The position numbers and the translations under genes are program-made. This document shows positions 2,565 through 63,000 of a stretch of 64,000 nucleotides of DNA, in pieces. Under the pieces are notes generated by a model. That model did not search any database, was not told the DNA's origin, and worked only from the letters and a program-made list of their open reading frames with translations. The stretch lies in assembly GCF_023055435.1 (NCBI RefSeq), contig NW_025964035.1:868001-932000 (forward strand), read 5' to 3'. This DNA comes from Haliotis rufescens (lineage: Eukaryota). How positions within the stretch are numbered: the first letter of the stretch is position 1; every line of letters begins with the position of its first letter.

Positions 2565-5500
2565 ATCTCCATTGCGCTGACGCAATCCGGGCCGCTAGAG
2601 GGCGCTGGAAGTAAGGCATCTCGTTGTACTCCGCTGAAACAAGATGCGCATCACATGTACACAAGGCTTGATGATGCAGATTCAGCCCGCTACACTACTG
2701 TCCAAAACAAACTTCCCCACGACCGGTAAACTGTCGCAACGTGATTGTACACTTCCGAACAAATCAAACGTCCCGCTGGCGACAGTATCGCAAACTATTC
2801 GAAACATGGCGATAGAAATTAATATTGTTGCTGTATTTATTTGAAAAGGAAATGTATTGTCTTTGTCTTTAACGTCAGACATGTCTGTCATTATCTGACT
2901 ACAGTATCGACCATGCGTATATATACAAAGTGGCCCACCTATATCTATGTGGGGTACACCTACTTTATTACCCACGTGGTAATACGAAAACAGGCAACAC
3001 AATAATGCTATATGAAGGCGGTCTGGAAATAATCGGTCTGAACTAGACAATCCACTGATTGATAACATGAACTTCGATCTACACAAATTGGATATGATGA
3101 CATCCATTTACCAAGCCAGTGGGATTGACCACCCGATCCCGTTATTCGCCTCTTACAACAAGCATAGTCGTCTATTACGACAAGCATGGGTTGCGGAAGA
3201 CCTATTCTAACCCGGATCTTCATGGGTTTCTTGTCTTATGTGAGTGAGTGAGTGAGTGAGTGAGTTGTGTTTACGCCGCTTTTAACAGTATTACAGTTAT
3301 ATCGCGGCGTGTCAGCTTAATGTGGGAGGAAAGCCCGAAGTGATGCAGGTCTCAGACGTTTACCACTTCGGTGAAACCCACGAGCACGGGTATGGTGCTG
3401 ACAAACCTAGAAACATAATCGGGACGAACCGGGTTTCGAACCCACAATCATTGGTTTCTGGCGTGCCCAAGGGACGCAACTCTGCACAGCGAATCGCGGC
3501 GCCTTAGACGACTCGGCCACCCGTGCCCCCTCTTGTCTTATGAGAAGGATGGACTTCAGATATGTAATTAGTTCCCACTGACTCAAAGATGCAGACATTG
3601 TTTAAGTAGAAGCGGCAACACATACCTAGTTGGTCTAAGGACATCAGTGCTGTAACACAAACAGAGAATTTCTATTGATATTAACATGGCACAGAATCTT
3701 TATCAAACTAAGCAATTGTATACAGAGAAGGGAAATTATGTTATCAGAACAGCATGTTCATGAAAACGTTTTGAACAAATATGAATGTTTGTGGTAGAGC
3801 GTCCGCCCGGAGAGCGGAAGGTCCGGGGTTCGATCCCCAGCTGCGTCATACCAAAAGACGTTAAAAGATGGTACTTGTTGTTACCCTGTCTGGCGCATGA
3901 CATTAAGGGGCTAAAACAAGGACTGGTCGGCTCGGAGTCAGTATACTGTGTCTGAGTTGGGTATTCATGTTAAACTGCGGCATGGTATCTCAGTGAGCTA
4001 GCACTATAAATCGGCATCAGTCCGGACTAGTACAAGCAGCCACACACACACATACGTGCATGCACGTCGCTATATAAGTGCAATAATCTTGGACGCGACG
4101 TTAAACCCAATTTCACCTCACCTCACCTCAAAATTAGAAATAGGGGGCTCTTATTAGAATGGTATTTTGGTGGAAAAAAACAGAGTTGAAAGATAAATTT
4201 CGTGGTTTATGCTGACAGCCTGAAATGTTTATATACGACAGATATATTTTTCCAGAATTTAATTGCCGATAATTAAGGGTGCATATAACACACGAGTGCA
4301 TATTATACACGAATAAATAAGTCTTGTGTACATTGATCAATCGAAAGGGGTGCTAATTGGGATTGTAAATATAATAAGCCAATATATCGCCGTGGGCGCT
4401 TATTAGAGCGGGGCGTTTATTACGTCGAATACGGTATCTTGTATATCCTGAACTATTTGGATGATGTTACGTTAAGCACCGAGTATCCCCGAGTACTGGC
4501 AGGAAGTATGAATCGAACAGAGGCCACATGAAAACGAGCAACTCATACCAGTTATCTTATGTTTTAGGTGTTTTGATTTTTGCATTCAGTTAATACAAGC
4601 AACAAAACCCGTTCAATGTTCGTATGAAATAACTGCCCAACCAGGGTTCATTTGACGATTCCGACTTAAGCCTAAACATGTGCTGATCAATCACGATCAT
4701 CTAGTGACGAAAACAGGCGTTCGTGAAAAACTGAGCACTGGTCACAAACACATGAAAAGTTCAAGAAAAGGAATTGCATCATTATTGTCATCGATTGGAA
4801 ATGTCCTCCACAATCATGTCTACAACAAAGCGTTTTGAAAGCTATACTAAGGCCTTGAATGTTGCAACCCTGATTAAACAACTTTTGAGAAAGAGTCATT
4901 TGACGCTTTTATAAATCTTCGAAGAACGATCATTCTCGATTGTATCTCAAACATTGTCAAATGTAGACAGCACAGCTGACTGAATATAGGTCCAGTATTC
5001 GAGGACATGCGCTCTATCAAGTCAAAAGACCATACTGTATACGTACGGAATCCCCCTGGCATACCCATACCCCCCGTTCCTCGAGGTGCAGCACTCCTTC
5101 CGACCCCGCTACCCCCTACTCCTCCTTGGCCCATTCCTCCGCCCATTCCTCCTCCTAGCTCCATGCCAAATCCTCCTGTTTAAACACAAACGTTTCAAGA
5201 GTTAAAACCATTATAATGTATAGTGCCGAATGCTGATTCATAATAATGTCTTTGTTTTTTTTCGTTTGTTGTTTGACGCCGCACTCCGCAATATTACAGC
5301 TATATGACAGCGGTCTGTAAATAATCGAGGATGGACCAGACAATCCAGTGATTGACATCATTAGCATCGACCCACGCAATTGGGATACAATGACATGTAT
5401 CAACCAAGTCAGCGAGCTTGACCACCCAATCCCGTTAGTCGCCTTTAACGACAAGCATAGTCGCCTTTTAACGGCAAGCATGGGTTGCTGAAGACTTACT

Positions 5501-8500
5501 CTACCCCGGATCTTCACGGGTCTTGTTGTTCAACGCCGCACTAGTCCAAGTGTATGACGGCGGTATTTGACGATTTGGTCACTCAGCGAGCCTGACCACC
5601 CAATCCCCTTTGTCGCCTCTTACGACAAGCACAGTCGCCTTTTAAGGCAGATTCCTGCTTATGACTTAAATTGTCATAACGTACCAGTGTCTCACCTGCA
5701 CGGCCATATGTTAAAGTAACGTTACAATATATCTGTTCTTCACGACCAGAAGTTGAAATAACGTTGTAATGTATCTATTCTATACGACAATACATGTGCT
5801 CTAAACAGCCAGAAGAAGCAACGTCGATGGAATAGATGTAATCTAACAATTATACAATGATGACGAGGTTACATTGTCGCGGACTTCAGGTGACGGAAAT
5901 TGACATTGCAGACACAGATGAATCTACATTAGCTCGGCACCCATGAACATCAGGTCTTGTCTTCAGCAACCCATGCTTGTCGTAAAAGTCGGCTGACGGG
6001 ATCGGGTTGTCAGACTCAGTGACTCGGTTGAAGCATGTCATCATATCCCAGTGGCATAGATCGATGTTCATGATGTCAGGCACTGGCTTGTCTGGTCCAG
6101 ACTCGATTATTTACAGACCGTCGTCATGTAGCTGGAATATTGCTGAGTGCGGCGTTTAAAAACGAACAGACCGAAACAGATTCAAAGAACAAAACAACAG
6201 AAGCAGGGTGGAGCCTCAGCGTCTTCAGAAGCTATGCTGCACCGGAGAAACGAGTGACCAAATCGTCAAATACCGCTGTCATACACTTGGAATAGTGCGG
6301 CGTTAAACAACAAGACCCGTGAAGATCCGGGGTAGAATAGGTCTTCAGCAACCCATGCTTGCCGTAAAAGGCGACTATGCTTGTCGTAAAAGGCGACTAT
6401 GATTGTCGTAAAAGGCGACTAACCGGATCGGGTGGTCAGGCTCGCTGACTTGGTTGATGCATGTCATCGATCCCTATTGCGTGGATCGATGCTCATGATG
6501 TCAATCTATGGATTGTCTTGTCCAGACTCGATTATTTACATACCGTCGTCATATAGCTGGAATATTGCTGAGTGCGGCGTTAAACATCAAACCAACCAAC
6601 CAACGTTAAACAACAAACAAGCAGACAGACAGTAGCTCGATGGCTGTATAACTTACCTCCACCCATGAATCCTGGCCCGACCATAGACTCCACTGGAACA
6701 CAAACAATGAAGGGCTAATGGAACCCCGGTAATATACCCCGCCAACATGTGGCGTTGTTTGGTGGTTGTCATTTAACAATGCAGCATATCTTACGTGCTC
6801 AGCATGAAATGGCTAAAGGTACAAGGTTAATTCCATTGGCCATTGACGACATCTTTGAAACCTTCTATGTTTGGTATCTATATCCTATAGGCCTATCAAC
6901 AATATTTTTTTGTATTCATAAATTCAGTAACACAACTACTCATTCATTTTGTTCTTAATGTAACGAGATACATAAATGTAAACTAACAAACTGCGAATAG
7001 TGTACACATTGTATTGAACTGTGAATTTTGAACACAGAGTATTGAGATGTGAATATTGTTAACATTGCATTGAACTGTGAATATTGAACACAGTGTATTG
7101 AGATGTGAATATTGTTAACATTGTATTCAACTGTGAATATTGCAAACAGAGTATTGAGATGTGAATATTGTTGACGTTGCATTGAACTGTAAATATTGCA
7201 AACAATGTATTTAGATGTTAATATTGTTAACATTGCATTGAACTGTAAATATTGCACACAGTGTATTGAGAGGTGAATATTGTTAATATTGTATTGAACT
7301 GTGAATATTGAACACAGTGTATTGAGATGTGAATATTGTACACATTGCATTGAATTGTGAATATTGAACACAGTGTATTGAGATGTGAATATTGTGAACA
7401 TTGCATTGTACTGCGAATATTGCAAACAGTGTATTGAGATGTGAATATTATGAACATTGCATTGAACTGTGAATATTGCAAACAGTGTATTGAGAGGTGA
7501 ATATTGTTAACATTGCATTGAACTGTGAATATTGCACACAGTGTATTGAGATGTGAAAATTGTACACATTGCATTGAGCTGTGAATATTGAACACAGTGT
7601 ATTGAGATGTGAATATTGTTAACATTGCATTGAACTGTGAATATTGCACACAGTGTATTGAGATGTGAATATTGTTAACATTGCATTGAACTGTGAATAA
7701 TGCACACAGTGTATTGAGATGTGAATATTGTTAACATTGTATTGAACTGTGAAATTGCACACAGTGTATTGAGGGGTGAATATTGTTAACAGTGTATTGA
7801 GATGTGAATATTGCCCACAGTGTATTGAGATGTGAATATTGTTAATATTGTTTTGAACTGTGAATATTGCACACAGTGTATTGAGATGTTAATATTGTTA
7901 ACATTGTATTGAACTGTGAATATTGCACACAGTGTATTGAGATGTGAATATTGTTAATATTGTTTTGAACTGTGAATATTGCACACAGTGTATTGAGATG
8001 TTAATATTGTTAACATTGTATTGAACTGTGATTATTGCCCACAGTGTATTGAGATGTGAATATTGTTAATATTGTTTTGAACTGTGATTATTGCACACAG
8101 TGTATTGAGATGTGAATATAGTTCACATTGCATTGAACTGTGAATATTGCACACAGTGTATTGAGATGTTAATATTGTTAACATTGCATTGAACTGTGAT
8201 TATTGCACACAGTGTATTGAGATGTGAATATAGTTCACATTGCATTGAACTGTGAATATTTAACACAGTGTATTGAGATGTGAATATTGTTCACATTGTA
8301 TTGAACTGTGAATATTTAACACAGTGTATTGAGATGTGAATATTGTTAACACTGTATTGAACTGTGAAATTGCACACAGTGTATTGAGGGGTGAATATTG
8401 TTAACAGTGTATTGAGATGTGAATATTGCCCACAGTGTATTGAGATGTGAATATTGTTAATATTGTTTTGAACTGTGAATATTGCACACAGTGTATTGAG

Positions 8501-10161
8501 ATGTTAATATTGTTAACATTGCATTGAACTGTGATTATTGCACACAGTGTATTGAGATGTGAATATTGTTCACATTGCATTGAACTGTGAATATTTAACA
8601 CAGTGTATTGAGATGTGAATATTGTTCACATTGCATTGAACTGTGAATATTTAACACAGTGTATTGAGATGTGAATATTGTTCACATTGTATTGAACTGT
8701 GAATATTGCACACAGTGTATTGAGATGTGAATATTGTTAACATTGTATAGAGATGTGAATATTGTTCACATTGTATTGAACTGTACATATTGCACACAGT
8801 GTATTGAGATGTGAATATTGTTAACATTGTATTGAACTGTGAATACTGCACATATTGCATTGAGATGTGAATATTGTTGACGTGGTATTGAACTGTGAAT
8901 AGTGTTCTCATTGCATTGAACTGTGAATATTGTCCACTTTGTATTGAACTGTGAATATTGTACATATTGTTTTGAAATGTGAATATTCTACATATTGTAT
9001 TGAACTGTGAATATTGTTCTCATTGCATTGAACTGTGAATATTGTACACTTTATATTGAATTGTGAATATTGTACACTTTGTATTGAAATGTGAATTTTG
9101 TACACATTGTATTGAGATGTGAATATTGTACACATTGTATTGTGATGTTAACATTATATACTTTGTATTGAACTGTGAATATTGTACATATTGTATTGAG
9201 ATGTGAATATTGTACATATTGTATTGTGATGTGAATATTGCACATAGTGTATTGAGATGTGAATATTATATACTTTGTATTGAACTGTGAATATTGTATA
9301 TATTGTATTGAGATGTGAATATTGTACACTTTGTATTGAATTGTGAATATTGTAAACTTTGTATTGAAACGAGAATATTGTACATATTGTATTGAACTGG
9401 GAACTTTGTACACTAGTATTATATCACATAGGCTTAGCTGAGATCCACAACATGTTCGTGAATGTGCCATATCCAATACTTACTTAAAGGACTGCCTAGC
9501 AGTTCCCTTGACATCATTGTTTAGTTAGATGTAAATAGTGTTATGACATACACTTTAAATCGTGGGGAAAATGCATAAACTTGCCCAACATGTAAAACAT
9601 CATCCGTCCAAGATATGAAAAAAATATGATTCTTAAATTAATTTTAATACTAGTATACATCTTACCATTACGTTATGTATAATATTTTGGTTGCATGTAT
9701 AATACATACTTCATGCATAATGGTCAATTAAACAATCTTTGTTCATGCCTCGCGTTTTAACGTTGTAGTCACGTTGACTCAACAAGGAATTACAATACTT
9801 ATAACGCATAGTTACCTCCGCCCCATTGTCCGGTGACACCTGGAAATTGAATCAACGTTATTGGTAACAAACTCAGGTACATTTTATAATGCACCAACAT
9901 TGTACAAATGACTTTCATAAACATGACAGTTACACAAACATACTTTACTTAATGCCTTTGCGGAATGCCTCATACATTTGAGCTGGAACATAAGCTCCCA
10001 GCCTGTTCACAACAATTGCTGGAGATATTTGATGTCAGGTAAAATCACAAATGCACACCTACTGATTATTGAAAAATATAAATAAGCGTAAACCTACCTT
10101 TCAATGTCAACAAAACGACTAATGGCTGCACAAGGATCCTCACTGATACCATATTGACCAT
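2565..10161 (-). CDS. Gene A: secreted Gly/Met-rich low-complexity protein (3' end unresolved). Coding exons 10098-10161, 6657-6692, 5047-5175, 3626-3649, 2565-2633
   Basis: All introns are GT-AG and phase 1. Spliced peptide: MVNMVSVRILVQPLVVLLTLKVES-MVGPGFMGGGGFGMELGGGMGGGMGQGGVGGSGVGRSAAPRGTGGMGMPGGFPLMSLDQLAEYNEMPYFQRPLAARIASAQWR... The hydrophobic N-terminus ending V-E-S looks like a signal peptide. Internal exon lengths 36/129/24/69 are all multiples of 3. Confidence 0.75.
3240..3530 (-). mobile_element. SINE family 2 (tRNA-like head, ~280 bp, V-domain-like ...gggtttc...tttcctcccac core)
   Basis: TSD tcttgtcttatg. Copies at 22391-22623, 30270-30557, 35333-35613, 36731-37012, 43488-43712, 46931-47213, 54908-55184 and 63660-63942. 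The V-domain label is from recall. Confidence 0.88.
3790..4130 (+). mobile_element. SINE family 3 (tRNA-derived, ~340 bp, Meta-domain-like core, (CCTCA)n tail)
   Basis: gtggtagagcgtccgcc...ggttcgatcccc head, then cataccaaaagacgttaaaagatggtac...gcattaagg core. Copies at 21023-21366, 33486-33793, 39300-39592, 41378-41665 and 58648-58980. The Meta label is from recall. Confidence 0.85.
4780..5010 (-). mobile_element. Penelope-like retroelement RT C-terminal remnant (related fragments at ~28840-28910 on - and ~42950-43035 on +)
   Basis: Translates VYI*QCLRYNRE*SFFEDL*KRQMTLSQKLFNQGCNIQGLSIAFK. This resembles the PLE thumb-region motif VYISQLIRY..C....F..R...L..KL..QGY (family assignment from recall). 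Confidence 0.5.
5047..5175 (-). CDS. Gene A exon 3 (Gly/Met-rich)
   Basis: Acceptor tttgtgtttaaacag, donor gtacgt; overlaps ORF 4874..5164; encodes GGFGMELGGGMGGGMGQGG...GMPGGF. Confidence 0.8.
6315..6620 (+). mobile_element. SINE family 4 (~270-300 bp, no tRNA head; gcttgtcgtaagaggcgactaa hairpin; (AAAC/CAAC)n tail)
   Basis: Copies at 3030-3228, 5260-5522, 5940-6160, 20596-20740, 27380-27648, 30750-31017, 33218-33455, 35015-35288, 44515-44695 and 48760-49008. Confidence 0.88.
6975..9415. repeat. AT-rich satellite, 28-bp subunit / 56-bp dimer, in gene A intron 1
   Basis: Repeats of tattgcacacagtgtattgagatgtgaa + tattgttaacattgcattgaactgtgaa over ~2.4 kb. Confidence 0.95.
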
Positions 10162-10719: not shown

Positions 10720-10726
10720 TTTTATT
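10720..10726 (-). promoter_or_regulatory. Polyadenylation signal (AATAAA) of gene B
   Basis: tttatt on the + strand ~210 nt after the stop codon. Confidence 0.55.
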
Positions 10727-10932
10727 TCAAATCATACATAACGTATTTCATTTCAGCACACTAATAATGAACCCGTAGGCTTATCCTTATGACAGATTAT
10801 AATTTAGCAGTCCTTTATAACATAGAAGCCATATCATGCCATCCACGTCGTTTCTGTACAATGCGACTTTCACAACCAAAATAGTAGTTTTAACTCAAAG
10901 GAAATGCAGTTTTGCAATCAAATCTGCAAAAT

Positions 10933-13900
10933 TTAGAGGAGGCTAAGTAAGAATGGATCTGGTCCCATGGCATGGTTAGGATCAACCATTTGATATGTAG
11001 AATGATGTGATTCAAATCCAACGCCTATCCCTTGATTTGCACCCAACCCTACATCAGGGCCGTGAAAAGAACCCATATTAGGTGCATGAATGTCCCTCCA
11101 TGGGTTTCCAAAACCCACATCCGGGCCAGGGAACGGAGCTGCGTTTCCAAAACCCATATCAGTTGCATGTCTGTCCCTCATTTGGTGTCCCAAACCCATC
11201 TCAGCACCGTGGAACGGACCTGGGTGTCCAAATCCAACATCGGTAGCCATACCCATATCAGGGCCTTGAAGCCGACCTACGTCTCTGAAACCCGTATGAG
11301 TAGCATGGCGATCTGCCATTGGGTGACCAGAACGTGTGTCCATTCCTGCTCCTTGTCTGGAATGTAATGTATCAATAGGTCCTGTACCCATCCCAAGAGC
11401 AGCATCGGCGTGTCCTACACCTGTATCTACAACACCACCAGATGCCTTGTCTGGCCCTAAAGTCTGAAAAGGACGTCCACCCCCTAGCCTCTGAACAGCA
11501 ATTTGAATATCCTGTATGTTACTTTGACCCTGGTTAGCCGTCAGCATGTCCATGGCGGCCTTGTTCTCTGACGCAAATTGAGATCTTGAGGCAGCATCAA
11601 GTCTGAGGTTTCCACCATGCGTGTTAAGACCACTACTATGTCCCTTCTCCATTAATTTATCATTTGCACCTAGCGACTGCGTTATTCTCAGCCTACCCCC
11701 AAACCTGTCAATGTGTGGATCCCTAACGGGACTATTGATGTCCGCAGCACTGATCACTATGGGGAGTCGGAATTTAGTGAGAAGCTCCGCATCAGTAATC
11801 CGACCCCCATCTACTATGTCAGTGACATTCTGTTTACCACTGGTAAACGTAGAACCAGAACGACTATCAAGTCCTTTAGCTTTGTTTAACACGTCCCCAA
11901 CACCGCCTGAAGAACTGTTCTCTGTCAGCATGTCAGGAGACATCACTGATAAGTCTGTGTGTTGTGCATCACTGCCAAGGGCATTGTTCGACAAACTTCT
12001 ACCTTGCTCTGATTGTCTGGTGGGGTCATTTTGACCACCATCCTGTAAAGTATTCCTCAGTGGAACCGAGTCTGCATGGAGATCCTTATTAGAAACTTGG
12101 CCCATAAGCGTGTCTCTGCCACTAACACTTCCCGTGATACTGTCATTAAGACGGTTATTGTTTAATCCCAACTTGGTCACATCTCCAGTGGACTTAGTTG
12201 TTTGAGTCATATCGCTGCCTGTTCTCCCAAGTATTCCATTCTTTAGTGATGTGCCATCATGTGATAATTCCTGGGACAAAGATAATGACCCTTGAGCACT
12301 TCTGCCCATATTTGGTAAAAGGACATCCTTTGCTGGCTGCGTACTCTCTTCATTACCCGTAATTCTGTTCTGGTTTAAATGAAGATCTGTTTTACGGTGA
12401 AAGAAGTTCTTATCAGAAAGAGTCGTTCCTTGTGTCAAAGAATTGCTCCCTACTGTACCAACCTTGGGATCTTTTTGTGTGTCAAATGTCGATAAGGTCT
12501 GTTTTTCCCTCAACAGAGCATCAGGTGATTTTCCCCCGAGGCCAACAGGCGATGTCATTGCAAATTTGGCACCGTTGTTCCCGGTAAGTTTTAGATCCCT
12601 TACCTCTGCGACACCCGGTGTTTCATGGACAGAATTGATCGTGGGTCTCTTTGAAAATATTTTTGTAGTGCTACCAACAGCCGAACTCACAAATCTAGCT
12701 TGATCATTAAAATGAGAGTTCATTCTTGAAGGTGAATGCGTCCCCCATCCGCGTGTGTCTACCCGGGATATCTGTGCCATTCTACTCCTTGGGAAAGATG
12801 GCGACATACTCTGGTGGGAAAAGCTTGACATCCGGTCAGAGGACCTAGGTGAATCCGAAGACATCCTTTGGGAACTATGGTCAAATGATGAGCCAGTGCC
12901 CACAAGTTGATGTCGATCTATGGCCTGCATTGATCTACGAGAGCTACCTGACGTTTCTCCTCGCATAGCGTGAGAATTGAAGTGAGAGTTGGATCTGTCT
13001 GTCATTCTCCAGTTAGGATGTGTCATCATGTCAGAGGAATGAGACATTGTTCTAGACGAACGGGGATTCTCTGAAAATAATGATGCCTCTCTGGAAGGGT
13101 GTGACATCCTTCTGTCTGACATCAGCCCTACATCCCTGAAATCCCTTCTACCACTCTGCAACCGTGCGTTGGCAAAATCCTGGCTCAGTCCACCAGGTTG
13201 TTGGGACATACCTGAGGATACTCTTGTAGGCGTCATCTGATTTGCAGATTGTTTCCTGTCAAATGTAAATCCAGCATGATCAGAGGCAAACTGTGATTGG
13301 CGACTTGTAGCTAGCTGTGTTGCGGACTGAGACAACATTCGTTGTGTTTGACCAAGTTGACTTCCAGCAGGGTCGCCCATTAGGTGAGTACCACCTGAGG
13401 CCTGCATTGCATTAGTTCCAGTACCAGAACCTGAAATCGCTTGACTACTAGCCAGATTAGGTGTCGGAACACCATCCCTTAATATGGCTCTTTGAAACTG
13501 GTTATCAGCAGGCCTGGTCGGAGACGTTCCAAGATCAGTTGATGCCATATTTCCAGCTGAGAAGCGCGCAGTGTCTTGCAATAAGGGATTCGTACCAGTG
13601 CCGGGCATGGACTGACCATGCCCACTGGAACCTCCTAGAAAGGCTCCTGTTTGATCGGCATTAGCAAAGCCTGATTGTTGACCAGAGGAGCCTCTGAGTT
13701 GAGTGTCGGCAATAGAAGAGGATAGGTGACGAGATGACTGCTCCATTCCTGTGATGTGGTTAGTAGGATTAGTCCTGCTCAGTGGATGTTCTCGGAAGCC
13801 AGTACCCATGTCCATCTGTGACGGCGGTCCTCTGTGTGTCAGTCCCATTCTCCTCCGCTCATGCAGTGCCATCTGGTGAGATGTGTGAAGGCCACGCCCA

Positions 13901-14603
13901 CGGTCATGTGAGGATGTTGATCGAGGAGCCACATCGGCAGGGTAGGGTTCAGTTCCCATTCCACTCCGCCCTGGATAATGTCCGCCAAGACCTTGATCAA
14001 ATGCTCCAGGACCAGGGTCGTAAGGTCCAGGTCCACCCACAGACGGATCATAGGGTCCAGACCCTGCCATAGTTTGATCATAGGGCCCTGCTCCCCCGCC
14101 AAGCCTGGGATCATAAGGACCAGGTGGTCCCATACTTGGATCATAAGGACCAGCAGCTCCCATGCTTGGATCATAAGGACCGACTGGTCCCATGCTTGGA
14201 TCATAAGGACCGGATGTCCCCATACTTGGATCATAAGGACCGGGTCTTCCCATACCTGGATCATAAGGTCCGCCTCTTCCCATACTTGGATCATAAGGTC
14301 CAGCACCTCTGGCTGGATCATATGGTCCCGGACCCATGCTGCCCATGCCGCCCATTCCGGGATCTACACTGCCAACTGTACCCATCCCTGGATCGTAAGG
14401 TCCTCTGCTCCTTAGCGGATCATAAGGACCTGGACCAGCCATAGTATTGCCATAGGGGTCAACTGCTCCCATTCTAGGATCATAGGTCGGGGCCTGGTGC
14501 CTGGGGAACATATGAGAAGCAGTCATTGGTTCAGTCAGAGCCGGTGTCAGTGATGCTGGAGCCATGCCAGGCGGAGGCTGAGCCCACATACCAGTAGTAG
14601 CAT
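10933..14603 (-). CDS. Gene B terminal exon (1222 full sense codons): GPYDPSMG repeats, Ser/Arg/Met/His-rich middle, Gly/His/Phe/Met C-terminal repeats
   Basis: 3.66-kb uninterrupted ORF (10933..14589) extended to acceptor cctattgttttacag at 14604; TAA stop at 10933-10935; AATAAA ~210 nt downstream. Confidence 0.92.
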
Positions 14604-17600
14604 CTGTAAAACAATAGGGTATATCTCAAACGATATGCGTATCTTTGATTGAGTATATGTTAATATTTCAAAGAAAAACCTAGCACTGTTTGATTTGATT
14701 TTCGAACAAAAGTGTTGAAGTATTGAAACTTTTTCATCCTGCTGGACGAAATAATAGAGCAAAGAGTTAATTAGATCAATTTAACTAGTGACGCTATAAC
14801 TGATAACTACACATTATACACGTCGTGCACTTAGCTTCAAATTGATACTGATACATAGGGTTCAGGTTCATATATAACGCGGAGGTTCATACATAGAGTG
14901 GAGGTTCATACATAGAGTGGAGGTTCCTACATACAGAAGGGTTCATACATAGAGTACAGGTTCATACATAGAGTGGAGGTTCATACACAGAGTGGAGGTT
15001 CATACATAGAGTAGAGGTTCATACATAGAGCGGAGGTTCATACATAGAGTGGAGGTTCATACATAGAGTGGAGGTTCATACATAGAGTTGAGGTTCATAC
15101 ATAGAGTAGAGGTTCATACATAGAGTGGAGGTTCATACATATAGGGGAGGTTCATACATACAGAGGAGGTTCATACATGCAGTGGAGCTTCATACATAGA
15201 GCGGAGGTTCATACATAGAGCGGAGGTTCATACATAGAGCGGAGGTTCATACATAGAGCGGAGGTTCATACATAGAGTGGATGTTCATACATAGAGTGGA
15301 GGTTCATACATAGAGCGGAGGTTCATACATGGAGTGGAGGTTCACACATAGAGTGGAGGTTCACACATAGAGTGGAGGTTCATACATACAGAGGAGGTTC
15401 ATACATGGAGAGGAGGTTCATACATAGAGTGGAGGTTCATACATAGAGCGGAGGTTCATACATAGAGCGGAGGTTCATACATAGAGTGGAGGTTCACACA
15501 TAGATTTGAGGTTCATACATAGAGTGGATGATCATACATAGAGCGGATGTTCATTCATAGAGCGGGGGTTCATACATAGAGTGGAGGTTCACACATAGAG
15601 TGGAGGTTCATACATACAGAGGAGGTTCATACATGGAGTGGAGGTTCATACATAGAGCGGAGGTTCATACATAGAGCGGAGGTTCATACATAGAGCGGAG
15701 GTTCATACATAGAGTGGAGGTTCACACATAGAGTGGAGGATCATACATAGAGCGGAGGTTCATACATAGAGTGGATGTTCATACATAGAGCGGGGGTTCA
15801 TACATAGAGTGGAGGTTCATACATAGAGTGGATGTTCATACATAGAGCGGAGGTTCACACATAGAGCGGAGGTTCATACATAGAGTGGAGGTTCACACAT
15901 AGATTGGAGGTTCATACATAGAGTGGATGTTCATACATAGAGCGGGGTTCATACATAGAGTGGAGGTTCATACATAGAGCGGAGGTTCACACATAGAGCG
16001 GAGGTTCAGACATAGAGTGGATGTTCATACATAGAGCGGAGGTTCATACATAGAGCGGAGGTTCACACATAGAGTGGAGGTTCAGACATAGAGTTGATGT
16101 TCATACATAGAGCGGGGTTCATACATAGAGTGGATGTTCATACATAGAGCGGAGGTTCACACATAGAGCGGAGGTTCATACATAGAGTGGAGGTTCACAC
16201 ATAGATTGGAGGTTCATACATAGAGTGGATGTTCATACATAGAGCGGGGTTCATACATAGAGTGGAGGTTCATACATAGAGCGGAGGTTCACACATAGAG
16301 CGGAGGTTCAGACATAGAGTGGATGTTCATACATAGAGCGGAGGTTCATACATAGAGCGGAGGTTCACACATAGAGTGGAGGTTCAGACATAGAGTTGAT
16401 GTTCATACATAGAGCGGGGTTCATACATAGAGAGGATGTTCATACATAGAGCGGAGGTTCACACATAGAGCGGAGGTTCATACATAGAGTGGATGTTCAT
16501 ACATAGAGTGGAGGTTCATACATAGAGCGGAGGTTCATACATAGAGCGGAGGTTCACACATAGAGTGGAGGTTCATACATGGAGTGGAGGATCATACATA
16601 GAGTGGAGGTTCATACATAGAGTGGAGGTTCACACATAGAGCGGAGGTTCATACATAGAGTAGAGGTTCATACATAGAGTGGATGTTCATACATAGAGCG
16701 GGGGTTCATACATAGAGCGGATGTTCATACATAGAGCGGGGGTTCATACATAGAGTGGAGGTTCATACATCGAGCAGAGGTTTCTACATTGAATGTAGCT
16801 CGCAATGTGACGTTCATACACCTATTGAAGGGCGAGGTGGAAAAGCCGTACTTCGTATATTCATGATATTTTAGAATTATTCGCGTGTCAATACATACCG
16901 AAGCATGGTATCCTGCAGCCAGCTGGGGGAAATAAGAAAAATTTGGTAAACAACATATGAAATGGATCTGTATGTACATACCTAGTCCTAGGTTCACACT
17001 GATTATGTCAACACACACGTGAGATTAAAACACATGTTGCAATGTCTCGTAGTAGGAGCCGAGCATCAATCATTCCTGCTTACTTGAAGGTATGTATGGG
17101 TATGTTTGTGTGTGTGCGTGTGTGTATGTGTGTGTGTGTGTGTGTGTTTATGTGTATGCTTNNNNNNNNNNNNNNNNNNNNNNNNNNNNNNNNNNNNNNN
17201 NNNNNNNNNNNNNNNNNNNNNNNNNNNNNNNNNNNNNNNNNNNNNNNNNNNNNNNNNNNNNNNNNNNNNNNNNNNNNNNNNNNNNNNNNNNNNNNNNNNN
17301 NNNNNNNNNNNNNNNNNNNNNNNNNNNNNNNNNNNNNNNNNNNNNNNNNNNNNNNNNNNNNNNNNNNNNNNNNNNNNNNNNNNNNNNNNNNNNNNNNNNN
17401 NNNNNNNNNNNNNNNNNNNNNNNNNNNNNNNNNNNNNNNNNNNNNNNNNNNNNNNNNNNNNNNNNNNNNNNNNNNNNNNNNNNNNNNNNNNNNNNNNNNN
17501 NNNNNNNNNNNNNNNNNNNNNNNNNGTGTATCGTTTAAATTTTGCACTTAACGTAGATTTTTTTAAACCAACCACATTTGTTTGCAAGACATGCAGGATA

Positions 17601-20600
17601 TCCTGACAAAACGTGTTGTCACAAGAAAAAACCTGTTTGGCTCCTCCTCTGACAACAATTGTTAAACATTGGATGCTGAACCCAAGTCACGCACTCACTC
17701 TTTATTTGCACATACGAGTAGGTGAAGATACTGGCATCTTTAGTGAACCCACATTCAGGAAGAACTACCACCAAACGCTCTGGCCTTCATGAATTATTAT
17801 GTATTGCTTATAAGAGTAATTATTTTTGTATAGTGTGACAGTCAATATTTTGTATTGTGTATGACAGTAATTATTTATTTATTGCGAGTAAGATTTATCA
17901 TTTGTGTATTGCGTGTGACAGTAATTATTATGTATTGTATGTGACAGAAATTTTGTATTTCGAGTAAGAGTAACTATTTATGCATTGTGTTTGAGAGTAA
18001 TTATTCATGTATTGGGTGACAGTTACTCTTTATATATTGCATGTGAGAGTGATTATTTATGTATTGCATGGAAGAGCAATTATTTATGTATTGTGTGTGA
18101 CAGTAACTCTTTATATATTGCAAAAGAGAGTGATTATTTATGTATTGCGTGAAAGAGAAATTATTTATGTATCGTGTGTGAAAAGTAATTATTTATGTAT
18201 TGTGTGTGAGATTAATTCTTTATATATTGCGTGTGAGAGTAACTATTTACGTATTGCGTGTGAGATTAATCATTTATGTATTGTGTGTGACAGTTTCACT
18301 TAATATGTTGCTTGTGAGAGTAACTATTTATGTATTGCGTGTGAAAGTAATCATTTATGTATTGTGTGTGACAGGAACTCTTTATATATTGCTTTTTAGA
18401 GTAATTATTCATGTATAGCGTGTGACAGTAATTATTCATGCAATGTGTGTGACAATAATTTTTTTATATATTGCTTGTGGTAGTAACTATTTATGTATTG
18501 CGTGGAAAAGTAATTATTTATGCATTGCGCGGAAGAGTAATTATTTATGTATATTCATGGAAGAGTAATTATTTTTGCATTGTGTGACAGTCATAATTTA
18601 TGCATTGCGTGGAAGAGTAATTATTTTGTGCCAGTCATTATTTATGTATTGCGTGGAAGAGTAATTATATTTTGTATTGTGACAGTAATAATTGATGTAA
18701 TGCGTTGAAGAGTAATTAGAGTAATTATTTATGTATGGTGTGGAAAAGTAATTATTTATGTATTGCGAAAAAGAGTACTCATTTATGTATTACGTGTAAG
18801 AGTTATCATATTCTATCTGAAAGGGAACCTTCTCGCACATTTCGTGTCTGTTTGTGTGTTTTCTTTACATTACGAGCAACGTAATATGGGGTACAATGGC
18901 ACACAATCAGCCAAGTCACCGAATTTGACCAGCTGATCCAGTGCAGTGGCCTGTTTACGACAGGTAAAAGAGAGCTGGGACCTATTATTAACATGGCTCC
19001 ACGAGACAGCTCCCCAGTCGTTAGTTAACGTCGTCTAGCGAACATAAAATCACTTACCATCGGCTACTCGATCAGCGACTGCAGTAGCTGAAATGACATC
19101 ACAATATGATTATAGCGTTATCAAAATAACGTTATCTCCAGGAATAACGACTTCTTCAACAGCATGAAGACGTAATTGTCCAATTAGAATGGAGGCTGCT
19201 CAGAACCAATAAAATATCAATATAATTATTCCTACGTTTATGAATTTACTTTATATAGCTCGATGAACGTTTCAATACAAATGCATGACAATATCAATAT
19301 ATATATATGTTGAAAACATCAACGGATATTAATCAATGTATGGCTGTATGTTTATTTACCGAGTTCGGCATTCATGACCTTCATTTTTCCAGCCTTCTTC
19401 TTGGCGTTTCGTATAAAACCTGCACAAGAGGAAAATAATATGAAATAGGTGCATACATGTATTTAAACAATACACTCATACCTTTAGTTTAACAACACAC
19501 TTATACCAGTAGTTTAACAACATCCGTATACCTGAACTTTAACAACACATTTATATATGTAGTTTAAGAACACACTGATACCTGTAGTTTAACAATACAC
19601 TCATACCTTTAGTTTAAGAACACACCCATACCTGTAGTTTAACAACACATTTATACCTGTAGCTTAAGAGCACACTCATACATTTAGTTTAAGAACACAT
19701 TCATACCTGGAGTTTAACAATACATTTATATCTGTAGTTTAAGAACACACTCATACCTGGAGTTTAACAACACATTTATATCTGTAGTTTAAGAACACAC
19801 TCATACCTGGAGTTTAACAACATACTTATACCTGAAGTTTAAGAACACACTCATACCCGTAGTTTAACAACACACTTATACCTGAAGTTATAATATTCGT
19901 TATAACATCGCACAGTGGCACGTAACTGACAGTGGTATATTTAGTTGCCGTTTGCGGTATCATATCAAATAAGCAGAACATTTTGGGCGATGCATCAGCC
20001 CAGATATGTCACCGTACACGGCGACTAAAGACACCATAACGAACTGTCTGGTAACCATATCGTACAACCGTTGACATTAAGGGTCAAAGGGAGACTACTC
20101 TTCAATCCTTAAAGGCCAAATCTTGTTGAAAATTGTAACTATTATCTTTAACAATAAAGTTACGTGATCTCAGAAATGATTAATGTCCTTGCACATAACA
20201 ATTAATGATATAAAAACACAAAACAGTGTCGAATAAGGAATTTATGTACCAGAAGTTTCATGTGAAATATGTGAGGTGTGTGTTGGAAAATCCAAGATGG
20301 CTGTTGGTATACGGTCTAATATTAGTAACAACCATCTTGCATATTTACTGACGATTTTGGGGCTCATGTGGGGTCAGTAGTTCTGCTCACTGATTGGTCA
20401 ATTTCACTTTAAGGCATAATAAACAATATAAACTGACATTTGTACTTAATAATTGGGATTATTTTCCAACTGTAACTCACGTGACACAACACAACCTGAT
20501 GCAGGTCGTGAACCTTATGGCGTGTCCCTTTGGTATGATTGTGCACCTAGTTCTGTAAAACACCGACTAACAGAACTTCTTTGAGAGGCATTTAGATTTT

Positions 20601-59088: not shown

Positions 59089-59094
59089 TTTATT
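59089..59094 (-). promoter_or_regulatory. Polyadenylation signal (AATAAA) of gene D
   Basis: tttatt on the + strand ~170 nt after the TGA. Confidence 0.55.
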
Positions 59095-59264: not shown

Positions 59265-62200
59265 TCACCAACCTGAAAGAAAAATACATAAACGAAATCA
59301 GTACCATTCAAGAAAAGGATTAAAAAGATTGAACAGTGACATAAGACAAAGTGAGTTTGGCTTAACGCCGCTATGTATTTCATGACGGCATGTCTGCTTG
59401 GAGGGAACAACTCGAAGTGATGCAGATCTTAGACGTTGACCACGCACGAGTAAGCTTGGATGATTCGAATCCCAGATCATTGGTTTGTGGAACACCTAAT
59501 GAACGCAGCTCCTTGAGCATATATATTAACATATATATGTATACACCCTTGTTACCTTATTCCAAATCATGGCATATAGTCTTATATAAAGATGACACAA
59601 ATGGTGTAACATAATTTAGCATTGTAATGGCGTTAGTAGATGGACAGACGGATTCAACATCTATGATGTTATAAGTGGGAAGACTTTTTTATTGGGGGAT
59701 CTACGTTCATATGTTCTTAAAAACGACAATAAATATGTATCTACACTTGTCAACAAACTGTTCTAACACTGCACCGACCTCTTTGAGCCATGGGTTGCTG
59801 TTGGGGGTTTGGCAGCTGTATTCCGAGCGTTCTGAAGAAGGCCGATATGGCGTCGTTCACGAACTGGGTTCTCTGTGGTGCTGGCATTCTTAGAAGTGCT
59901 TCGGCGAGATGGGGGGCTATTTCGGGATCCTTTGAAAAAATAAACATAATAAGAAATTCTGTATAAAATAGCAGCCTTGCTGTCTTCTTAGCCGAAGCCT
60001 TATAATATATGGTTATTATAACGGACACGGTGGGTTCTTTAACGAGCAGGCGAACATGTGAATAATTGGTCTGCAGGAGCGATGGTGTAGGATATGGTTC
60101 CCGTTTTTGGGAACACCTGGAGGTCATCACTGATTTTCAGTGATCCAGTCACATAGAGAATCTCATCCGAGTGTCTTTTGATATCAAATATATCAACACG
60201 AGTTGATAAAAGTGGAAAAATTCCGAGGCTTGCCGAGGATATTTGCAAATTTTATCAACGAGTGTTATCTTGGGGTTAGTGTTAACCCGGGGTTATCTTA
60301 ATGAGGTGAGTGGATGTGTCCTGGGTCCGGACCAACAGTGTTTCATTGTGTATTTACATGATCTCAAAAACCTCAATGAACCACTCACCTGGCTTTGTGG
60401 CATGTTAGCCATATTGGCTCTGAGTCCTTGTTTCTGTGATGGTTGCTGTGGGTGTTGCTGTTGGGGAGGCTGAGGCTGAGGCTGGGGATTTGGAGGCTGT
60501 GGGTAAGGTGATGGACCTTGGTTCTGAGGCTGGTTGGGGAAATGATTATGTTGAGTTGGCATTTGGGAGATCTGTTGGTTGAATGGCAACTGTGTTGGCT
60601 GTGGCTGGGATGGAGGTTGTGGTTGTGGTTGTTGTGATTGATGTTGCTGTGGCTGTTGTGGCTGATGCTGGGGCGGTGTAATCTGGAAGGGATCCTTTCC
60701 CCACGGGGCAGCGTTCTGTGTGCTGGGATCGGGGAATGGCATCGGGGCTCTAGCTGGGGGGGAAGCGGGGGATCCCCATCTGTTTCCCCTTGGAGGTTGT
60801 GGAGAGGGAGGGACATAGAGATGCCCGCCGTTGGGCCCGTTGCCTTGTGGTCTTCCATTTCCCATACCGCTCGGTTTCTGACCTCCCACGGGATTTTGCA
60901 GTAGGTTTACAATACTTCCCATAACATTTTGCATATTGTTCCCAGCTTTGTTAGGATTTCCCATACCGTTGTTAGGATTTCCCATACCGTTGTTAGGATT
61001 TCCCATACCGTTGTTAGGATTTCCCATACCACCCATTGGGTTCCCCATGCCATTCATTGGGTTCCCCATGCCATTCATGGGATTTCCCATTCCACCCATC
61101 GGATTTCCCATTCCGCCCATCGGGTTGCCCATACCACCCATCGGGTTGCCCATACCGCCCATACCACCCATCGGGTTGCCCATACCGCCCATCGGGTTTC
61201 CCATACCACCCATCATGTTTCCTAGAGCAGCCAGAGGATTTGCCATTGGTCCCATAGGATTCACCCCGCCGTTCATCGCTGCAAACATGCCCATCATGCC
61301 AATCTTACGAGGTCCCCGAAGAGCTGTAAACAAATAAATATGAGTTAGACAAACGTAGTTGTAACTAGTGAGTGAGTGAGTAGTTTTGTTTCACTCCGCT
61401 TGGAATCTTTTTTCAGTTACTTCATTGCGTGGCAGTTTTAACTTGTACCACATGTTCCCGTGTTATTTTTCAGTTGACTTGCCGTTGCATGTGTTTGTGA
61501 CGAGCACCACCAGTGAGACAGGATACACTCACCTTTTCGCGAACACCTGGTATCATTACTATTTGATAGTGATCCATAAGCACATGCTCATGTTCATGAA
61601 AAAGTCGGAATCGTACAATCAACAGATTTATGCAGAGATTTCTATTGCATATGGAAAGGGATTTGGCGCTTTATTCCAACGAGATTCACTTTTGTGAAAC
61701 ACAAACTTTGGTACAATGTTGCTACAAAACGGACCCGGGATTCAAACCCGCGACCACTGCACAGATAATTAGGGCCTTAGACGATTGAGCTAACCTTGCC
61801 TATTTGAATATGAATCATTACTGTATTTCTATTTCAGTGAGTGAGTGAGTGAGTATGGTTTTACGCCGCTTTTAGCAATATTCCAGCAATATCACGGCGG
61901 GGGACACCAGAAATGAGTTTCACACATTGTACCCATGTCGGGAATCGAACCCGGGTCTTCGGCGTGACGAGCGAACGCTTTAACCACTAGTCTACCCGAC
62001 CGCCCCTTCTATTTCAGATTATAAAATTAACGAAAGAAAGCACGTCCATACTTACGATCACAAGCAATATTACAGCCGGCACCTGAAAGAAACAATAAAT
62101 AATCATAATCATAGTCAGAGGAAGCGTATGTAACTCAGACAACTTCAAATGAAGTTAAAGAACACCCGATTAATTCACTTTAATATGATTACTACATATT

Positions 62201-62709
62201 GCCATGACTTCAATTCAGTGCTATATAAGTTGGTCATCAGAGCCAAGTCCAACAAGACTCCTTTTGCATGTATAGGTGAGTGAGTATATGTTTAATGTGT
62301 AGCAGTCAGGTACTGCTATATAATGGCGGCAAACCAGTGGTTATGGTCAACTCCTTAGCGTTATGATCTGGTACAATCAGAGAGTTCGTACACTGGGGCC
62401 ATCGAGTCTGGTTGTTGAATCATCATGTAATAATGCAAAACGCGAATACCTGGTGTCATCACTATTATTGATTTATAAACAAATGCTAATAATAAAGTCG
62501 AAATCGTACAAGGGGCTCTGCTTTTAAATTTCTTAAGGAAACGGTTATATCTCATTGAATTACGTTATATGTATGTTAAATAATACATATTAGTGTGTGT
62601 CAACTTACCATCAACGAGATCAGAGAATGCTCCGGCTGTGAAAAAAAATTAAAATGTTAATAATAAAGACTTTTATATATTTTTCTACATATTTCGACAC
62701 GACACACGT

Positions 62710-62750
<41 letters not shown>

Positions 62751-63000
62751 GATCATCTTCATGATGTTATCTGTGGATATCTGGGCAACCACAAGCTAAT
62801 TTAAAAAGAATGAAGGAGTGAACAAATGAGTGGCATGTCATCATGATTCGAACCCATGATTTGAACCAACGTATGACTTTAAACGGTTGGACATAAAATA
62901 AGTATGACATGGCCATGATCAAAAGAACTACAACTGCAGCAAGAACACAATAGACTGAGATGCCGTAGAGTTTACGTACCGACTTCCATTGGACTCCGGT
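59265..63000 (-). CDS. Gene D (5' incomplete): Gly/Met/Asn- and Pro/Gln-rich low-complexity protein. Coding exons 62980-63000, 62609-62635, 62056-62082, 60389-61323, 59779-59929, 59265-59272
   Basis: GT-AG junctions in consistent phase. Peptide: ...RSPMEVAGAFSDLVDGAGCNIACDPLRGPRKIGMMGMFAAMNGGVNPMGP...(GMGNPxx)x12...PQ-rich...QSQ|DPEIAPHLAEALLRMPAPQRTQFVNDAISAFFRTLGIQLPNPQQQPMAQR|GW*. AATAAA at 59089-59094. No signal-peptide exon found; it probably lies beyond 64000. Confidence 0.75.
60389..61323 (-). CDS. Gene D large exon: GMGNP(M/N)(G/N) heptads then Pro/Gln tract
   Basis: Within ORF 60293..61333; acceptor ttatttgtttacag, donor CAG|gtgagt. Confidence 0.88.
61837..62006 (-). mobile_element. 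SINE family 1
   Basis: Full length, TSD ttctatttcag. Confidence 0.92.

What the first reader, a model, noticed from the sequence alone, without database searches (positions are those of the whole stretch)
2565..63000. Tandem cluster of four same-strand genes for secreted low-complexity proteins with a shared exon scaffold but different repeat payloads
Seen in sequence: genes A, B, C and D run head-to-tail on the minus strand. A, B and C each split a signal peptide across a short phase-1 first exon (34 coding nt in both B and C) and a 30-36 nt second exon. The payloads differ completely: GGM (A), GPYDPSMG plus His/Gly (B), Ser/Thr/Ala (C), GMGNP plus Pro/Gln (D). Established: molluscan mantle and shell secretomes are rich in lineage-specific secreted repetitive low-complexity-domain proteins. 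Inference: this is a co-regulated kit for one extracellular material (shell matrix, periostracum, mucus or glue) that diversified by replacing the large exon behind a conserved front end. I recognise none of the proteins.
Basis: partly seen in the sequence, partly recalled or inferred. Interest (0 to 1): 0.85.

Follow-up and report, generated by a model that had tools for sequence, protein, structure and literature searches.

The report
Abalone shell-matrix protein gene cluster
This stretch of abalone genome carries a row of real genes for secreted, disordered proteins whose counterparts in a sister species were found inside the shell by a published proteome, so the proteins are already known; their side-by-side arrangement and partly shared gene layout did not turn up in my limited paper searches.

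Summary
The window is Haliotis DNA; an earlier scan note calls it red abalone.

All four have orthologues among the 77 "major" shell-matrix proteins of H. laevigata (Mann et al. 2018, PMC6003135):
- A = Tri_127820 plus Tri_45070
- B = idb_3591
- C = Tri_29101
- D = idb_20008

Those contigs come from a mantle transcriptome, and MS/MS peptides span several of the predicted splice junctions.

- **Gene A** is only the front end of an 11-exon gene. Its 1,339-codon payload exon lies outside the window, and "GGM" is a front-end exon also present in B.
- **Gene C** starts with a 64-nt coding first exon and a 26-nt second exon, shown by spliced RNA contigs. The 34-nt candidate at 46571-46538 sits in a dispersed repeat.
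- **Gene D** has a signal peptide with the 34/30-nt pattern, 16 kb beyond the window end.

A, B and D share a front end of phase-1 micro-exons followed by one giant exon. B and D also share a 4-Cys module with conserved intron positions. C is built differently. The large exons are unrelated once composition is corrected.

A fifth shell-protein gene (idb_4071) lies 37-54 kb away on the other strand.

Earlier scan notes on this window (micro-exons, 4-Cys module) agree. The scan also noted another secreted-protein cluster elsewhere in this genome.

The parts
10098..10152 (-). Gene A exon 1: 55 coding nt from the ATG at 10152 (an alternative in-frame ATG sits at 10161), ends in phase 1. It encodes the first part of the signal peptide (MVSVRILVQPLVVLLTLK).
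   Evidence: It matches the N-terminus of H. laevigata Tri_127820, which that paper flags as having a signal peptide.
9816..9839 (-). Gene A exon 2: 24 nt, phase 1 to 1 (GVTGQWGG).
   Evidence: The sequence is conserved in Tri_127820.
5047..5175 (-). Gene A exon 3: 129 nt, a Gly/Met-rich front-end exon. It is the counterpart of B exon 3.
   Evidence: The local alignment with B exon 3 scores 70 against 43.8 +/- 7.6 for shuffles; 8 of 2000 shuffles reach it.
3626..3649 (-). Gene A exon 4: 24 nt (PLMSLDQL).
   Evidence: The H. laevigata MS/MS peptide GFPLMSLDQLAEYNEMPYLQR spans the exon 3/4 and 4/5 junctions.
2565..2633 (-). Gene A exon 5: 69 nt with a GTAAGT donor. The gene continues outside the window.
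   Evidence: The later exons are at L005:9761-9717, 8054-8016, 7362-7336 and 5970-5947, then a 27-nt exon, then the giant exon (open frame L005:628-4701).
10933..14603 (-). Gene B exon 14: the giant 3,671-nt exon, stop codon included. It carries the GPYDPSMG repeats, a long Ser-rich disordered stretch and a His/Gly/Met-rich tail.
   Evidence: It is 93% identical to an H. cracherodii protein and 48% to an H. asinina protein.
16899..24321 (-). Gene B exons 4-13: ten symmetric phase-1 micro-exons of 21, 18, 27, 27, 39, 12, 30, 60, 30 and 24 nt. Coordinates: 24321-24301, 24040-24023, 23853-23827, 23346-23320, 22718-22680, 22125-22114, 21722-21693, 19419-19360, 19087-19058, 16922-16899. They encode the 4-Cys module.
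   Evidence: H. laevigata peptides IQMAITSYLNGGGEIPSTGGGNIACVIR and VMNADLATAVADKVADAGCR span these junctions, including the 12-nt exon.
24655..24795 (-). Gene B exon 3: 141 nt, Gly/Ala/Met-rich.
25614..25646 (-). Gene B exon 2: 33 nt, the second half of the signal peptide (GLCFSQ, then MAPPP).
27842..27875 (-). Gene B exon 1: 34 coding nt, phase 1 (MFTACFLFTLT).
34495..34592 (-). Gene C last exon, with the stop codon. It is the end of the C-terminal globular domain.
   Evidence: It matches the C-terminus of H. laevigata Tri_29101.
36135..36303 (-). Gene C exon of the globular domain (begins IHFFNPDGRY).
   Evidence: The peptide ATIHFFNPDGR spans the junction with the exon before it.
38149..38272 (-). 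Gene C exon of the globular domain. A minisatellite built from copies of the exon end plus its donor follows it.
39006..39119 (-). Gene C exon that runs into the assembly gap at 38831-39005. Its 3' end (about 5 codons and the donor) is unread.
39694..39772 (-). Gene C linker exon (begins VDTKGVETTS).
40242..41228 (-). Gene C exon 4: the Ser/Thr/Ala repeat exon. Its acceptor at 41228 is set by RNA joints.
   Evidence: joint 42256 to 41228 in X1 and X2. Also. The donor at 40242 is predicted, not tested.
42256..42865 (-). Gene C exon 3: a Ser/Ala/Thr-rich exon that starts in phase 0.
   Evidence: joints 43885 to 42865 and 42256 to 41228. Also.
43885..43910 (-). Gene C exon 2: 26 nt (LHVVKRSLV), goes from phase 1 to phase 0.
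   Evidence: joints on both sides in X1, X2 and X9.
44924..45022 (-). Gene C exon 1: 64 coding nt from the ATG at 44987 (MFPLMVCSLCAVAVTVAHIDG), ends in phase 1.
   Evidence: an X9 contig runs unspliced from 45022 to 44924. The X1 and X2 contigs have 27 nt on the far side of the 44924 joint. Also.
46350..46750 (.). A copy of a dispersed repeat. It contains the 34-nt ATG candidate at 46571-46538, which is not an exon of C.
   Evidence: at least 40 copies at 86-99% identity on many contigs; no joint from it, and only low-depth mismatched contigs that also occur in the C-negative run.
59265..59272 (-). Gene D last coding exon, up to the TGA stop. An AATAAA signal sits at 59094-59089.
59779..59929 (-). 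Gene D penultimate exon: 151 nt, not repetitive.
60389..61323 (-). Gene D large exon: 935 nt, GMGNP repeats followed by a Pro/Gln-rich part.
   Evidence: It is close to identical in layout to H. laevigata idb_20008.
62056..63000 (-). Gene D: three phase-1 micro-exons at 63000-62980 (21 nt), 62635-62609 (27 nt) and 62082-62056 (27 nt). They form the end of the 4-Cys module.
   Evidence: The upstream exons lie outside the window: 34-nt exon 1 at L004:5806-5773, 30-nt exon 2 at L004:3520-3491, and further exons in L004 and L003.
17162..17525 (.). Assembly gap inside the B intron between exons 12 and 13.
   Evidence: no orthologue residue is missing from the model.
29351..29777 (.). Assembly gap in the spacer between B and C, about 1.5 kb upstream of B's start codon.
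38831..39005 (.). Assembly gap that truncates a gene C exon. It was left unfilled.

Best explanation
The window is the core of a genomic cluster of shell-matrix protein genes of an abalone. Four genes on the minus strand, plus a fifth on the plus strand 37-54 kb away, encode proteins that start with a signal peptide and are largely intrinsically disordered and of low complexity; C also ends in a globular domain. In a congener these proteins are made in the mantle and end up occluded in the shell: A, B and C mainly in nacre, D mainly in the prismatic layer.

A, B and D are built alike. The signal peptide is split by a phase-1 intron. A run of symmetric phase-1 micro-exons of 12-141 nt follows, encoding short conserved modules: a Gly/Met-rich exon in A and B, and a 4-Cys module in B and D. 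Then comes one very large exon that holds the repeat-rich disordered payload.

The most likely history (inferred) is tandem duplication of one such gene. After that the big exon turned over quickly by in-frame repeat gain and loss, until no sequence similarity remained, while the small front-end exons kept their phase, positions and a few residues.

C is a mucin-like protein with a C-terminal domain that the H. laevigata paper annotated as an RmlC-like jelly-roll fold. It sits in the cluster but does not share the scaffold.

Shown: gene models, orthology to published shell proteins, the splice junctions of C, and co-presence of B and C transcripts. Inferred: common ancestry of A, B and D, and what each protein does in the shell.
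For: - B has annotated orthologues in H. cracherodii (93% identity) and H. asinina (48%).
- The 14-exon B model has GT-AG introns, all in phase 1, and one open frame of 1,388 aa.
- Motifs from all four genes occur in the H. laevigata shell-proteome supplements, with MS/MS peptides. The matching entries are Tri_127820 and Tri_45070 for A, idb_3591 for B, Tri_29101/CLC_652 for C, and idb_20008/CLC_363 for D.
- All these entries are in that paper's Table 1 of 77 major proteins, with per-layer abundances. A, B and D are flagged there as having a signal peptide.
- The contigs are from mantle RNA.
- Spliced contigs with GT..AG joints confirm C exons 1 to 4 in three runs. The run that lacks B also has zero depth on C exons.
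- A continues through colinear phase-1 micro-exons into the giant exon in L005 (open frame L005:628-4701). The two H. laevigata contigs overlap by 43 residues.
- D exon 1 has 34 coding nt and exon 2 has 30 nt, like B's 34 and 33.
- The B and D 4-Cys modules align with z about 4-5. The module opens with an 18-nt exon of pattern xxCxxL in both genes, the second Cys is the codon split by a phase-1 intron in both, and Cys3 and Cys4 sit in the last micro-exon before the big exon in both.
- Clustering is not chance. Six of the 77 major entries (five genes) map within about 134 kb of a 1.33-Gb genome.
Against: - No shell proteomics or tissue-labelled RNA for this species was available. The run labels are coded, so 'mantle' rests on the congener.
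- The DNA around exons 1 and 2 of A, B and C shows no similarity.
- The peptide-level similarities of the front ends are short and partly compositional. For A against B, 8 of 2000 shuffles reach the score.
- In my recollection, not checked here, phase-1 introns next to signal peptides are common in secreted-protein genes generally, so the shared layout could be partly convergent.
- The large exons show no similarity at all with composition-based statistics.
- D's orthologue was not found in the protein database.
- No signal-peptide predictor was available. For C the call rests on hydropathy only.
Confidence: 0.85

Rival explanations
1. The genes are neighbours, and A, B and D look alike in layout only by convergence. 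Secreted-protein genes often carry a phase-1 intron within or just after the signal peptide. Runs of symmetric small exons could arise independently, so A, B and D would not be paralogues.
For: There is no DNA similarity around exons 1 and 2. The large exons show no similarity. The A-B similarity lies in a Gly/Met-rich exon and is modest. C shows that an unrelated gene can sit in the same cluster and also have a phase-1 first intron.
Against: B and D both have exactly 34 coding nt in exon 1. Both open the module with an 18-nt xxCxxL exon, split the second Cys codon with a phase-1 intron, and place a GC-x-I-x-C motif in the last micro-exon before the giant exon. The aligned tail scores z about 4-5. 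A and B share the order signal-peptide exon 1, signal-peptide exon 2, Gly/Met exon, then a short exon containing an LD motif (PLMSLDQL in A, ENPFALD in B).
Confidence: 0.25
2. The cluster is not one co-regulated kit. The genes are expressed in different mantle zones and serve different shell layers, and they merely share a chromosomal neighbourhood left by duplication.
For: In H. laevigata, A, B and C are enriched in nacre fractions and D in prismatic acid-insoluble fractions. Within nacre, C is mostly in the acid-insoluble fraction and B and the 3' part of A mostly in the acid-soluble fraction.
Against: All orthologues were assembled from one mantle RNA sample. B and C are present together in X1, X2 and X9 and absent together in X23. 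Most major proteins were detected in both layers.
Confidence: 0.4
3. These are general mantle or epithelial secretions (mucus-like proteins) that are trapped in the shell passively and have no specific role in mineralisation.
For: C is mucin-like (Ser/Thr/Ala repeats). No function has been tested for any of them. Shell proteomes are known to contain bystander proteins such as actin.
Against: Each passes the paper's 'major protein' threshold of at least 0.2% of total in two or more fractions after surface cleaning. They also show layer- and solubility-specific partitioning.
Confidence: 0.15

Closest known systems
Haliotis laevigata shell-matrix proteome entries Tri_127820, Tri_45070, idb_3591, Tri_29101/CLC_652, idb_20008/CLC_363 and idb_4071 (Mann et al. 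2018, Proteome Sci 16:11, PMC6003135)
   Same: They are direct orthologues of the genes here. They share the N-termini, the 4-Cys module, the GPYDPSMG and GMGNP repeats, and the C-terminal domain.
   Different: That work had transcripts and peptides only. It listed Tri_127820 and Tri_45070 as two separate proteins. The genome shows they are one gene, and shows the tandem arrangement and the exon structure.
Pearl-oyster shematrin and KRMP families of repetitive low-complexity shell proteins (own knowledge, not checked here)
   Same: They are tandemly duplicated, mantle-secreted, fast-evolving shell proteins in which the signal-peptide exon is the conserved part.
   Different: As I recall, those genes have few exons, and members within a family keep recognisably related Gly-rich payloads. 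Here a long phase-1 micro-exon front end precedes payloads with no detectable similarity.
Vertebrate SCPP gene cluster (enamel, dentine, milk and saliva proteins; own knowledge, not checked here)
   Same: It is a tandem cluster of genes for secreted disordered proteins of mineralised tissue. Homology there is seen mainly in gene structure, intron phase and the signal-peptide exon rather than in sequence.
   Different: It is an unrelated lineage. As I recall, SCPP introns are phase 0 and the genes have no giant terminal exon. It is an analogue, not a relative.
Schistosoma micro-exon genes and aphid 'bicycle' genes (the latter seen, PMC9168663)
   Same: They are secreted proteins encoded through runs of symmetric micro-exons, and homology is recognisable by gene structure.
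   Different: As I recall, nearly the whole coding region is micro-exons in those genes. Here micro-exons make up only the front end and about 90% of the protein comes from one exon.

Membership tests
Molluscan shell-matrix proteins (operational class) | The protein is identified by mass spectrometry in cleaned, demineralised shell. | tested here: met
   Met for the orthologues in H. laevigata: peptides and Table 1 abundances. Not tested for this species itself.
Molluscan shell-matrix proteins (operational class) | The protein has an N-terminal signal peptide and is secreted. | tested here: inconclusive
   All four have a hydrophobic N-terminal core; the best 10-residue Kyte-Doolittle mean is 2.1-2.7. 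The paper flags a signal peptide for the A, B and D orthologues. No SignalP was available, and C's orthologue contig is truncated at the 5' end.
Molluscan shell-matrix proteins (operational class) | The gene is expressed in the mantle. | tested here: inconclusive
   The orthologue contigs derive from mantle RNA of a congener. Runs of this species hold B and spliced C, but their tissue labels are coded.
One paralogous family A/B/D (front-end homology) | Same intron phase and symmetric micro-exons ahead of one giant exon. | tested here: met
   All mapped front-end introns of A, B and D are phase 1, and every mapped internal front-end exon length is a multiple of 3. D's exon chain is not fully mapped.
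One paralogous family A/B/D (front-end homology) | Sequence similarity of front-end modules beyond composition. | tested here: inconclusive
   B-D: score 41-45 against 24.5 +/- 4.3 for shuffles, reached by 2-10 of 2000, with matching Cys and intron positions. A-B: 70 against 43.8 +/- 7.6, reached by 8 of 2000. There is no DNA-level similarity.
One paralogous family A/B/D (front-end homology) | Gene C shares the scaffold. | tested here: not met
   C has a 64-nt coding first exon, a 26-nt second exon ending in phase 0, two large repeat exons, then a multi-exon globular domain.
Micro-exon genes in the Schistosoma sense | Most of the coding sequence is made of symmetric micro-exons. | tested here: not met
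   In B, 12 small internal exons give 154 codons out of 1,388. One exon encodes the rest.

The most novel reading that the evidence does not exclude
Several 'orphan' disordered shell proteins with no mutual sequence similarity (A, B, D, and perhaps others nearby) descend from one ancestral gene at this locus. The phase-1 micro-exon front end would be the only surviving trace of that ancestry. Gene structure and position would then give a general way to recover the hidden families of mollusc shell proteins. They would also show how new matrix proteins arise: by duplication plus runaway repeat turnover in one giant exon, much as in the vertebrate SCPP cluster.
Probability: 0.45. Interest if true: 0.6.

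Novelty: new member of a known kind. Interest (0 to 1): 0.45.

Why it matters
The authors of the abalone shell proteome asked whether their many compositionally odd, unmatchable proteins share true homology. This locus gives a concrete, testable answer for some of them.

- Six of their 77 major entries come from five neighbouring genes.
- Two of those entries (Tri_127820 and Tri_45070) are one gene.
- Three genes share an exon scaffold despite unrelated payloads.

That gives a handle for finding hidden families of shell proteins by gene structure, and for choosing targets for knock-down studies of nacre against prismatic layer formation. It is a useful refinement, not a surprise in kind.

Tried and rejected
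- **Protein database, gene D:** searches with D's large exon, whole and restricted to its non-repetitive middle, found nothing. The candidate list is swamped by low-complexity words, or the orthologue is unannotated or outside the length window.
- **Representative library, gene C:** a scan with C's 56-residue exon gave only a chance hit to a PKD-domain protein.
- **Pfam:** nothing for any exon or for the H. asinina orthologue.
- **Exon 1 and 2 flanks:** DNA alignment of A, B and C showed no homology.
- **Large exons:** BLAST with composition correction gave no hits. The uncorrected hits are compositional.
- **Paper searches:** searching for the repeat motifs as words found nothing. Searches for abalone shell-gene clusters and for micro-exons in shell genes found no paper describing this locus.
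- **First models corrected:** my first A model, with wrong donors and a TAA stop at 2561, and my first C exon 4 acceptor at 41342 were wrong. They were corrected by peptide evidence and RNA joints.
- **Reader-type exon rejected:** the 34-nt first exon for C at 46571-46538 was rejected.
- **Joined models:** Searches were done exon by exon by reference. Exons were joined only inside local scripts, to check frames and to compare with proteins already fetched.
- **Fold of C's domain:** the C-terminal domain of C was therefore not folded, and an assembly gap also interrupts it.
- **Neighbouring Cys-repeat frame:** the open frame in L006 is not shown to be a shell protein.

Full report
**What the window is**

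The window is G000:C257:868001-932000 of a 1.33-Gb, 615-contig genome. The largest minus-strand open frame (10933-14589) finds an H. cracherodii protein at 93% identity and an H. asinina protein at 48%. The DNA is therefore from an abalone. An earlier scan note on another piece of this genome calls it red abalone; I did not verify the species name.

**Gene B**

I mapped the two orthologues back onto the window and placed splice sites. This gives a 14-exon model.
- Every intron is GT-AG and in phase 1.
- The internal exons are 33, 141, 21, 18, 27, 27, 39, 12, 30, 60, 30 and 24 nt.
- The last exon is 3,671 nt (14603-10933), and the joined frame is open for 1,388 codons.
- Exon 1 has 34 coding nt (27875-27842) and exon 2 has 33 nt.
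- The gap at 17162-17525 lies in the intron between exons 12 and 13. No orthologue residue is unaccounted for.

**The proteins are known shell proteins**

A word search of the supplements of Mann et al. 2018 (PMC6003135) with short motifs from each gene hit sequences and MS/MS peptide tables.
- B is idb_3591.
- D is idb_20008/CLC_363.
- C is Tri_29101/CLC_652.
- A is Tri_127820.
- The 1,358-codon open frame just outside the window (L005:628-4701) is Tri_45070.

All are in that paper's Table 1 of 77 major shell proteins.
- A, B and C are mainly in nacre fractions. D is mainly in prismatic acid-insoluble fractions.
- A, B and D are flagged there as having signal peptides and being disordered.
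- C is annotated there with an RmlC-like jelly-roll domain.
- The Tri, CLC and idb contigs were assembled from mantle RNA.

Several identified peptides span my predicted junctions:
- A exons 3/4/5
- B exons 8/9/10/11, 11/12/13 and 13/14
- the C junction at ...GGRAT|IHFF...

This is protein-level support in a congener.

**Gene A**

Tri_127820 and Tri_45070 overlap by 43 residues. In the genome the five A exons in the window are 10152-10098, 9839-9816, 5175-5047, 3649-3626 and 2633-2565. Five further phase-1 micro-exons in L005 follow, and then the giant exon.

A is therefore an 11-exon gene of about 1,490 codons whose payload is Pro/Ser/Thr/Gln-rich. The Gly/Met-rich exon is a front-end element that B also has in third position. 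The A-B alignment scores 70 against 43.8 +/- 7.6 for shuffles. The paper's two entries are one gene.

**Gene C**

- Contigs in X1, X2 and X9 carry GT..AG joints 44924 to 43910 and 43885 to 42865.
- X1 and X2 also carry the joint 42256 to 41228. X9 uses a donor 39 nt upstream.
- An X9 contig runs unspliced from 45022 to 44924.

Exon 1 therefore holds 64 coding nt from the ATG at 44987, and exon 2 is 26 nt and ends in phase 0. The 34-nt candidate at 46571-46538 is not joined to anything and lies in a repeat with at least 40 copies.

X23 has zero depth on C exons, so B and C are present and absent together in these runs.

The gap at 38831-39005 removes the end of the exon that starts at 39119. 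The H. laevigata orthologue has only seven residues between the flanking conserved stretches, so about five codons and the donor are missing. I left the gap unfilled.

**Gene D**

Within the window D reads MEV... with no signal peptide. The H. laevigata orthologue, however, has about 230 more N-terminal residues.

Searching the flanks fetched from the genome found exon 1 at L004:5806-5773 (34 coding nt, phase 1) and exon 2 at L004:3520-3491 (30 nt). A chain of symmetric phase-1 micro-exons leads from there to the window exons. D spans about 20.5 kb.

**Shared scaffold**

A, B and D share this layout: a signal peptide split by a phase-1 intron, then symmetric phase-1 micro-exons, then one giant exon.

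B and D also share a 4-Cys module.
- It opens with an 18-nt exon of pattern xxCxxL in both genes.
- The second Cys codon is split by a phase-1 intron in both.
- Cys3 and Cys4 sit in the last micro-exon before the big exon in both.
- The aligned tail scores 41-45 against 24.5 +/- 4.3 for shuffles.

The DNA around exons 1 and 2 is not alignable. The large exons show no similarity once composition is corrected. C does not share the scaffold.

**Extent of the cluster**

A scan of 50 kb further on each side found the orthologue of idb_4071, another major nacre protein. It lies on the plus strand, 37-54 kb below the window start.

Five genes, covering six of the 77 major entries, thus lie within about 134 kb. 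By my estimate, random placement would give about 0.005 neighbours at this distance.

**Interpretation**

This is a shell-matrix protein gene cluster. It needs correcting for A, C and D.

The proteins are published but uncharacterised. My four paper searches found no paper describing the genomic arrangement, the merging of two entries into one gene, or the structural paralogy of A, B and D.

The kind is familiar: tandem clusters of fast-evolving secreted disordered biomineralisation proteins, as in pearl-oyster shematrins or the vertebrate SCPP cluster. I cite those two from my own knowledge.

**Limits**

- Run labels were coded.
- No signal-peptide predictor was on hand.

Noticed in passing
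Outside the window: G000:C257, window-relative -53803 to -37460, plus strand (loci L012-L016): Two large Pro/Gln/Trp-rich open frames match H. laevigata idb_4071, another major nacre protein listed as 'similar to basic proline-rich / methionine-rich protein'. The shell-protein cluster therefore extends beyond the window and onto the other strand.
   Followed up: partly
L005 (open frame L005:628-4701) together with window 2565-10152: The two H. laevigata proteome entries Tri_127820 and Tri_45070, listed as separate proteins, are the 5' and 3' parts of one gene. Tri_127820 ends ...KLKRSE where Tri_45070 reads ...KLKATLDK. This suggests a short isoform or a retained intron.
   Followed up: partly
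window 37525-38180: A minisatellite of 44-111-nt units, each carrying a copy of the end of C's exon plus its GTAAGA donor, sits directly after the real donor at 38149. It forms an array of decoy 5' splice sites (also an earlier scan note).
   Followed up: partly
window 6995-9395 and 14851-16782: There are large intronic tandem arrays: 43 copies of a 56-nt unit in A intron 2, and 102 copies of a 19-nt unit in the last B intron.
   Followed up: no
window 42256-42295, 42662, 40950: The related species (run X9) uses a donor 39 nt upstream in C exon 3. It also differs by in-frame indels only (3 nt and 9 nt) in the repeat exons, as expected for repeat turnover under frame constraint.
   Followed up: no
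L006:5552-6139 (minus strand) and L006:7365-7329, 1392-1356: An open frame holds two copies of a 6-Cys motif ending NGCGHTCQ, which is WAP-like but lacks the CC pair. Two identical 37-nt phase-1 signal-peptide-like exons (MVTAIVVLGLCA) lie nearby. There is no Pfam hit and no match in the shell-proteome supplements.
   Followed up: partly
window 52194-52613 (plus strand) and 49541-50565: The C-D spacer holds a remnant that looks like the N-terminus of a Tc1/mariner-type transposase (judged by eye, not searched) and a 67-nt tandem array of 15 copies.
   Followed up: no
window 10161-10933: B's stop codon and A's start codon are only about 770 nt apart. A's promoter must therefore overlap or abut B's 3' UTR.
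   Followed up: no
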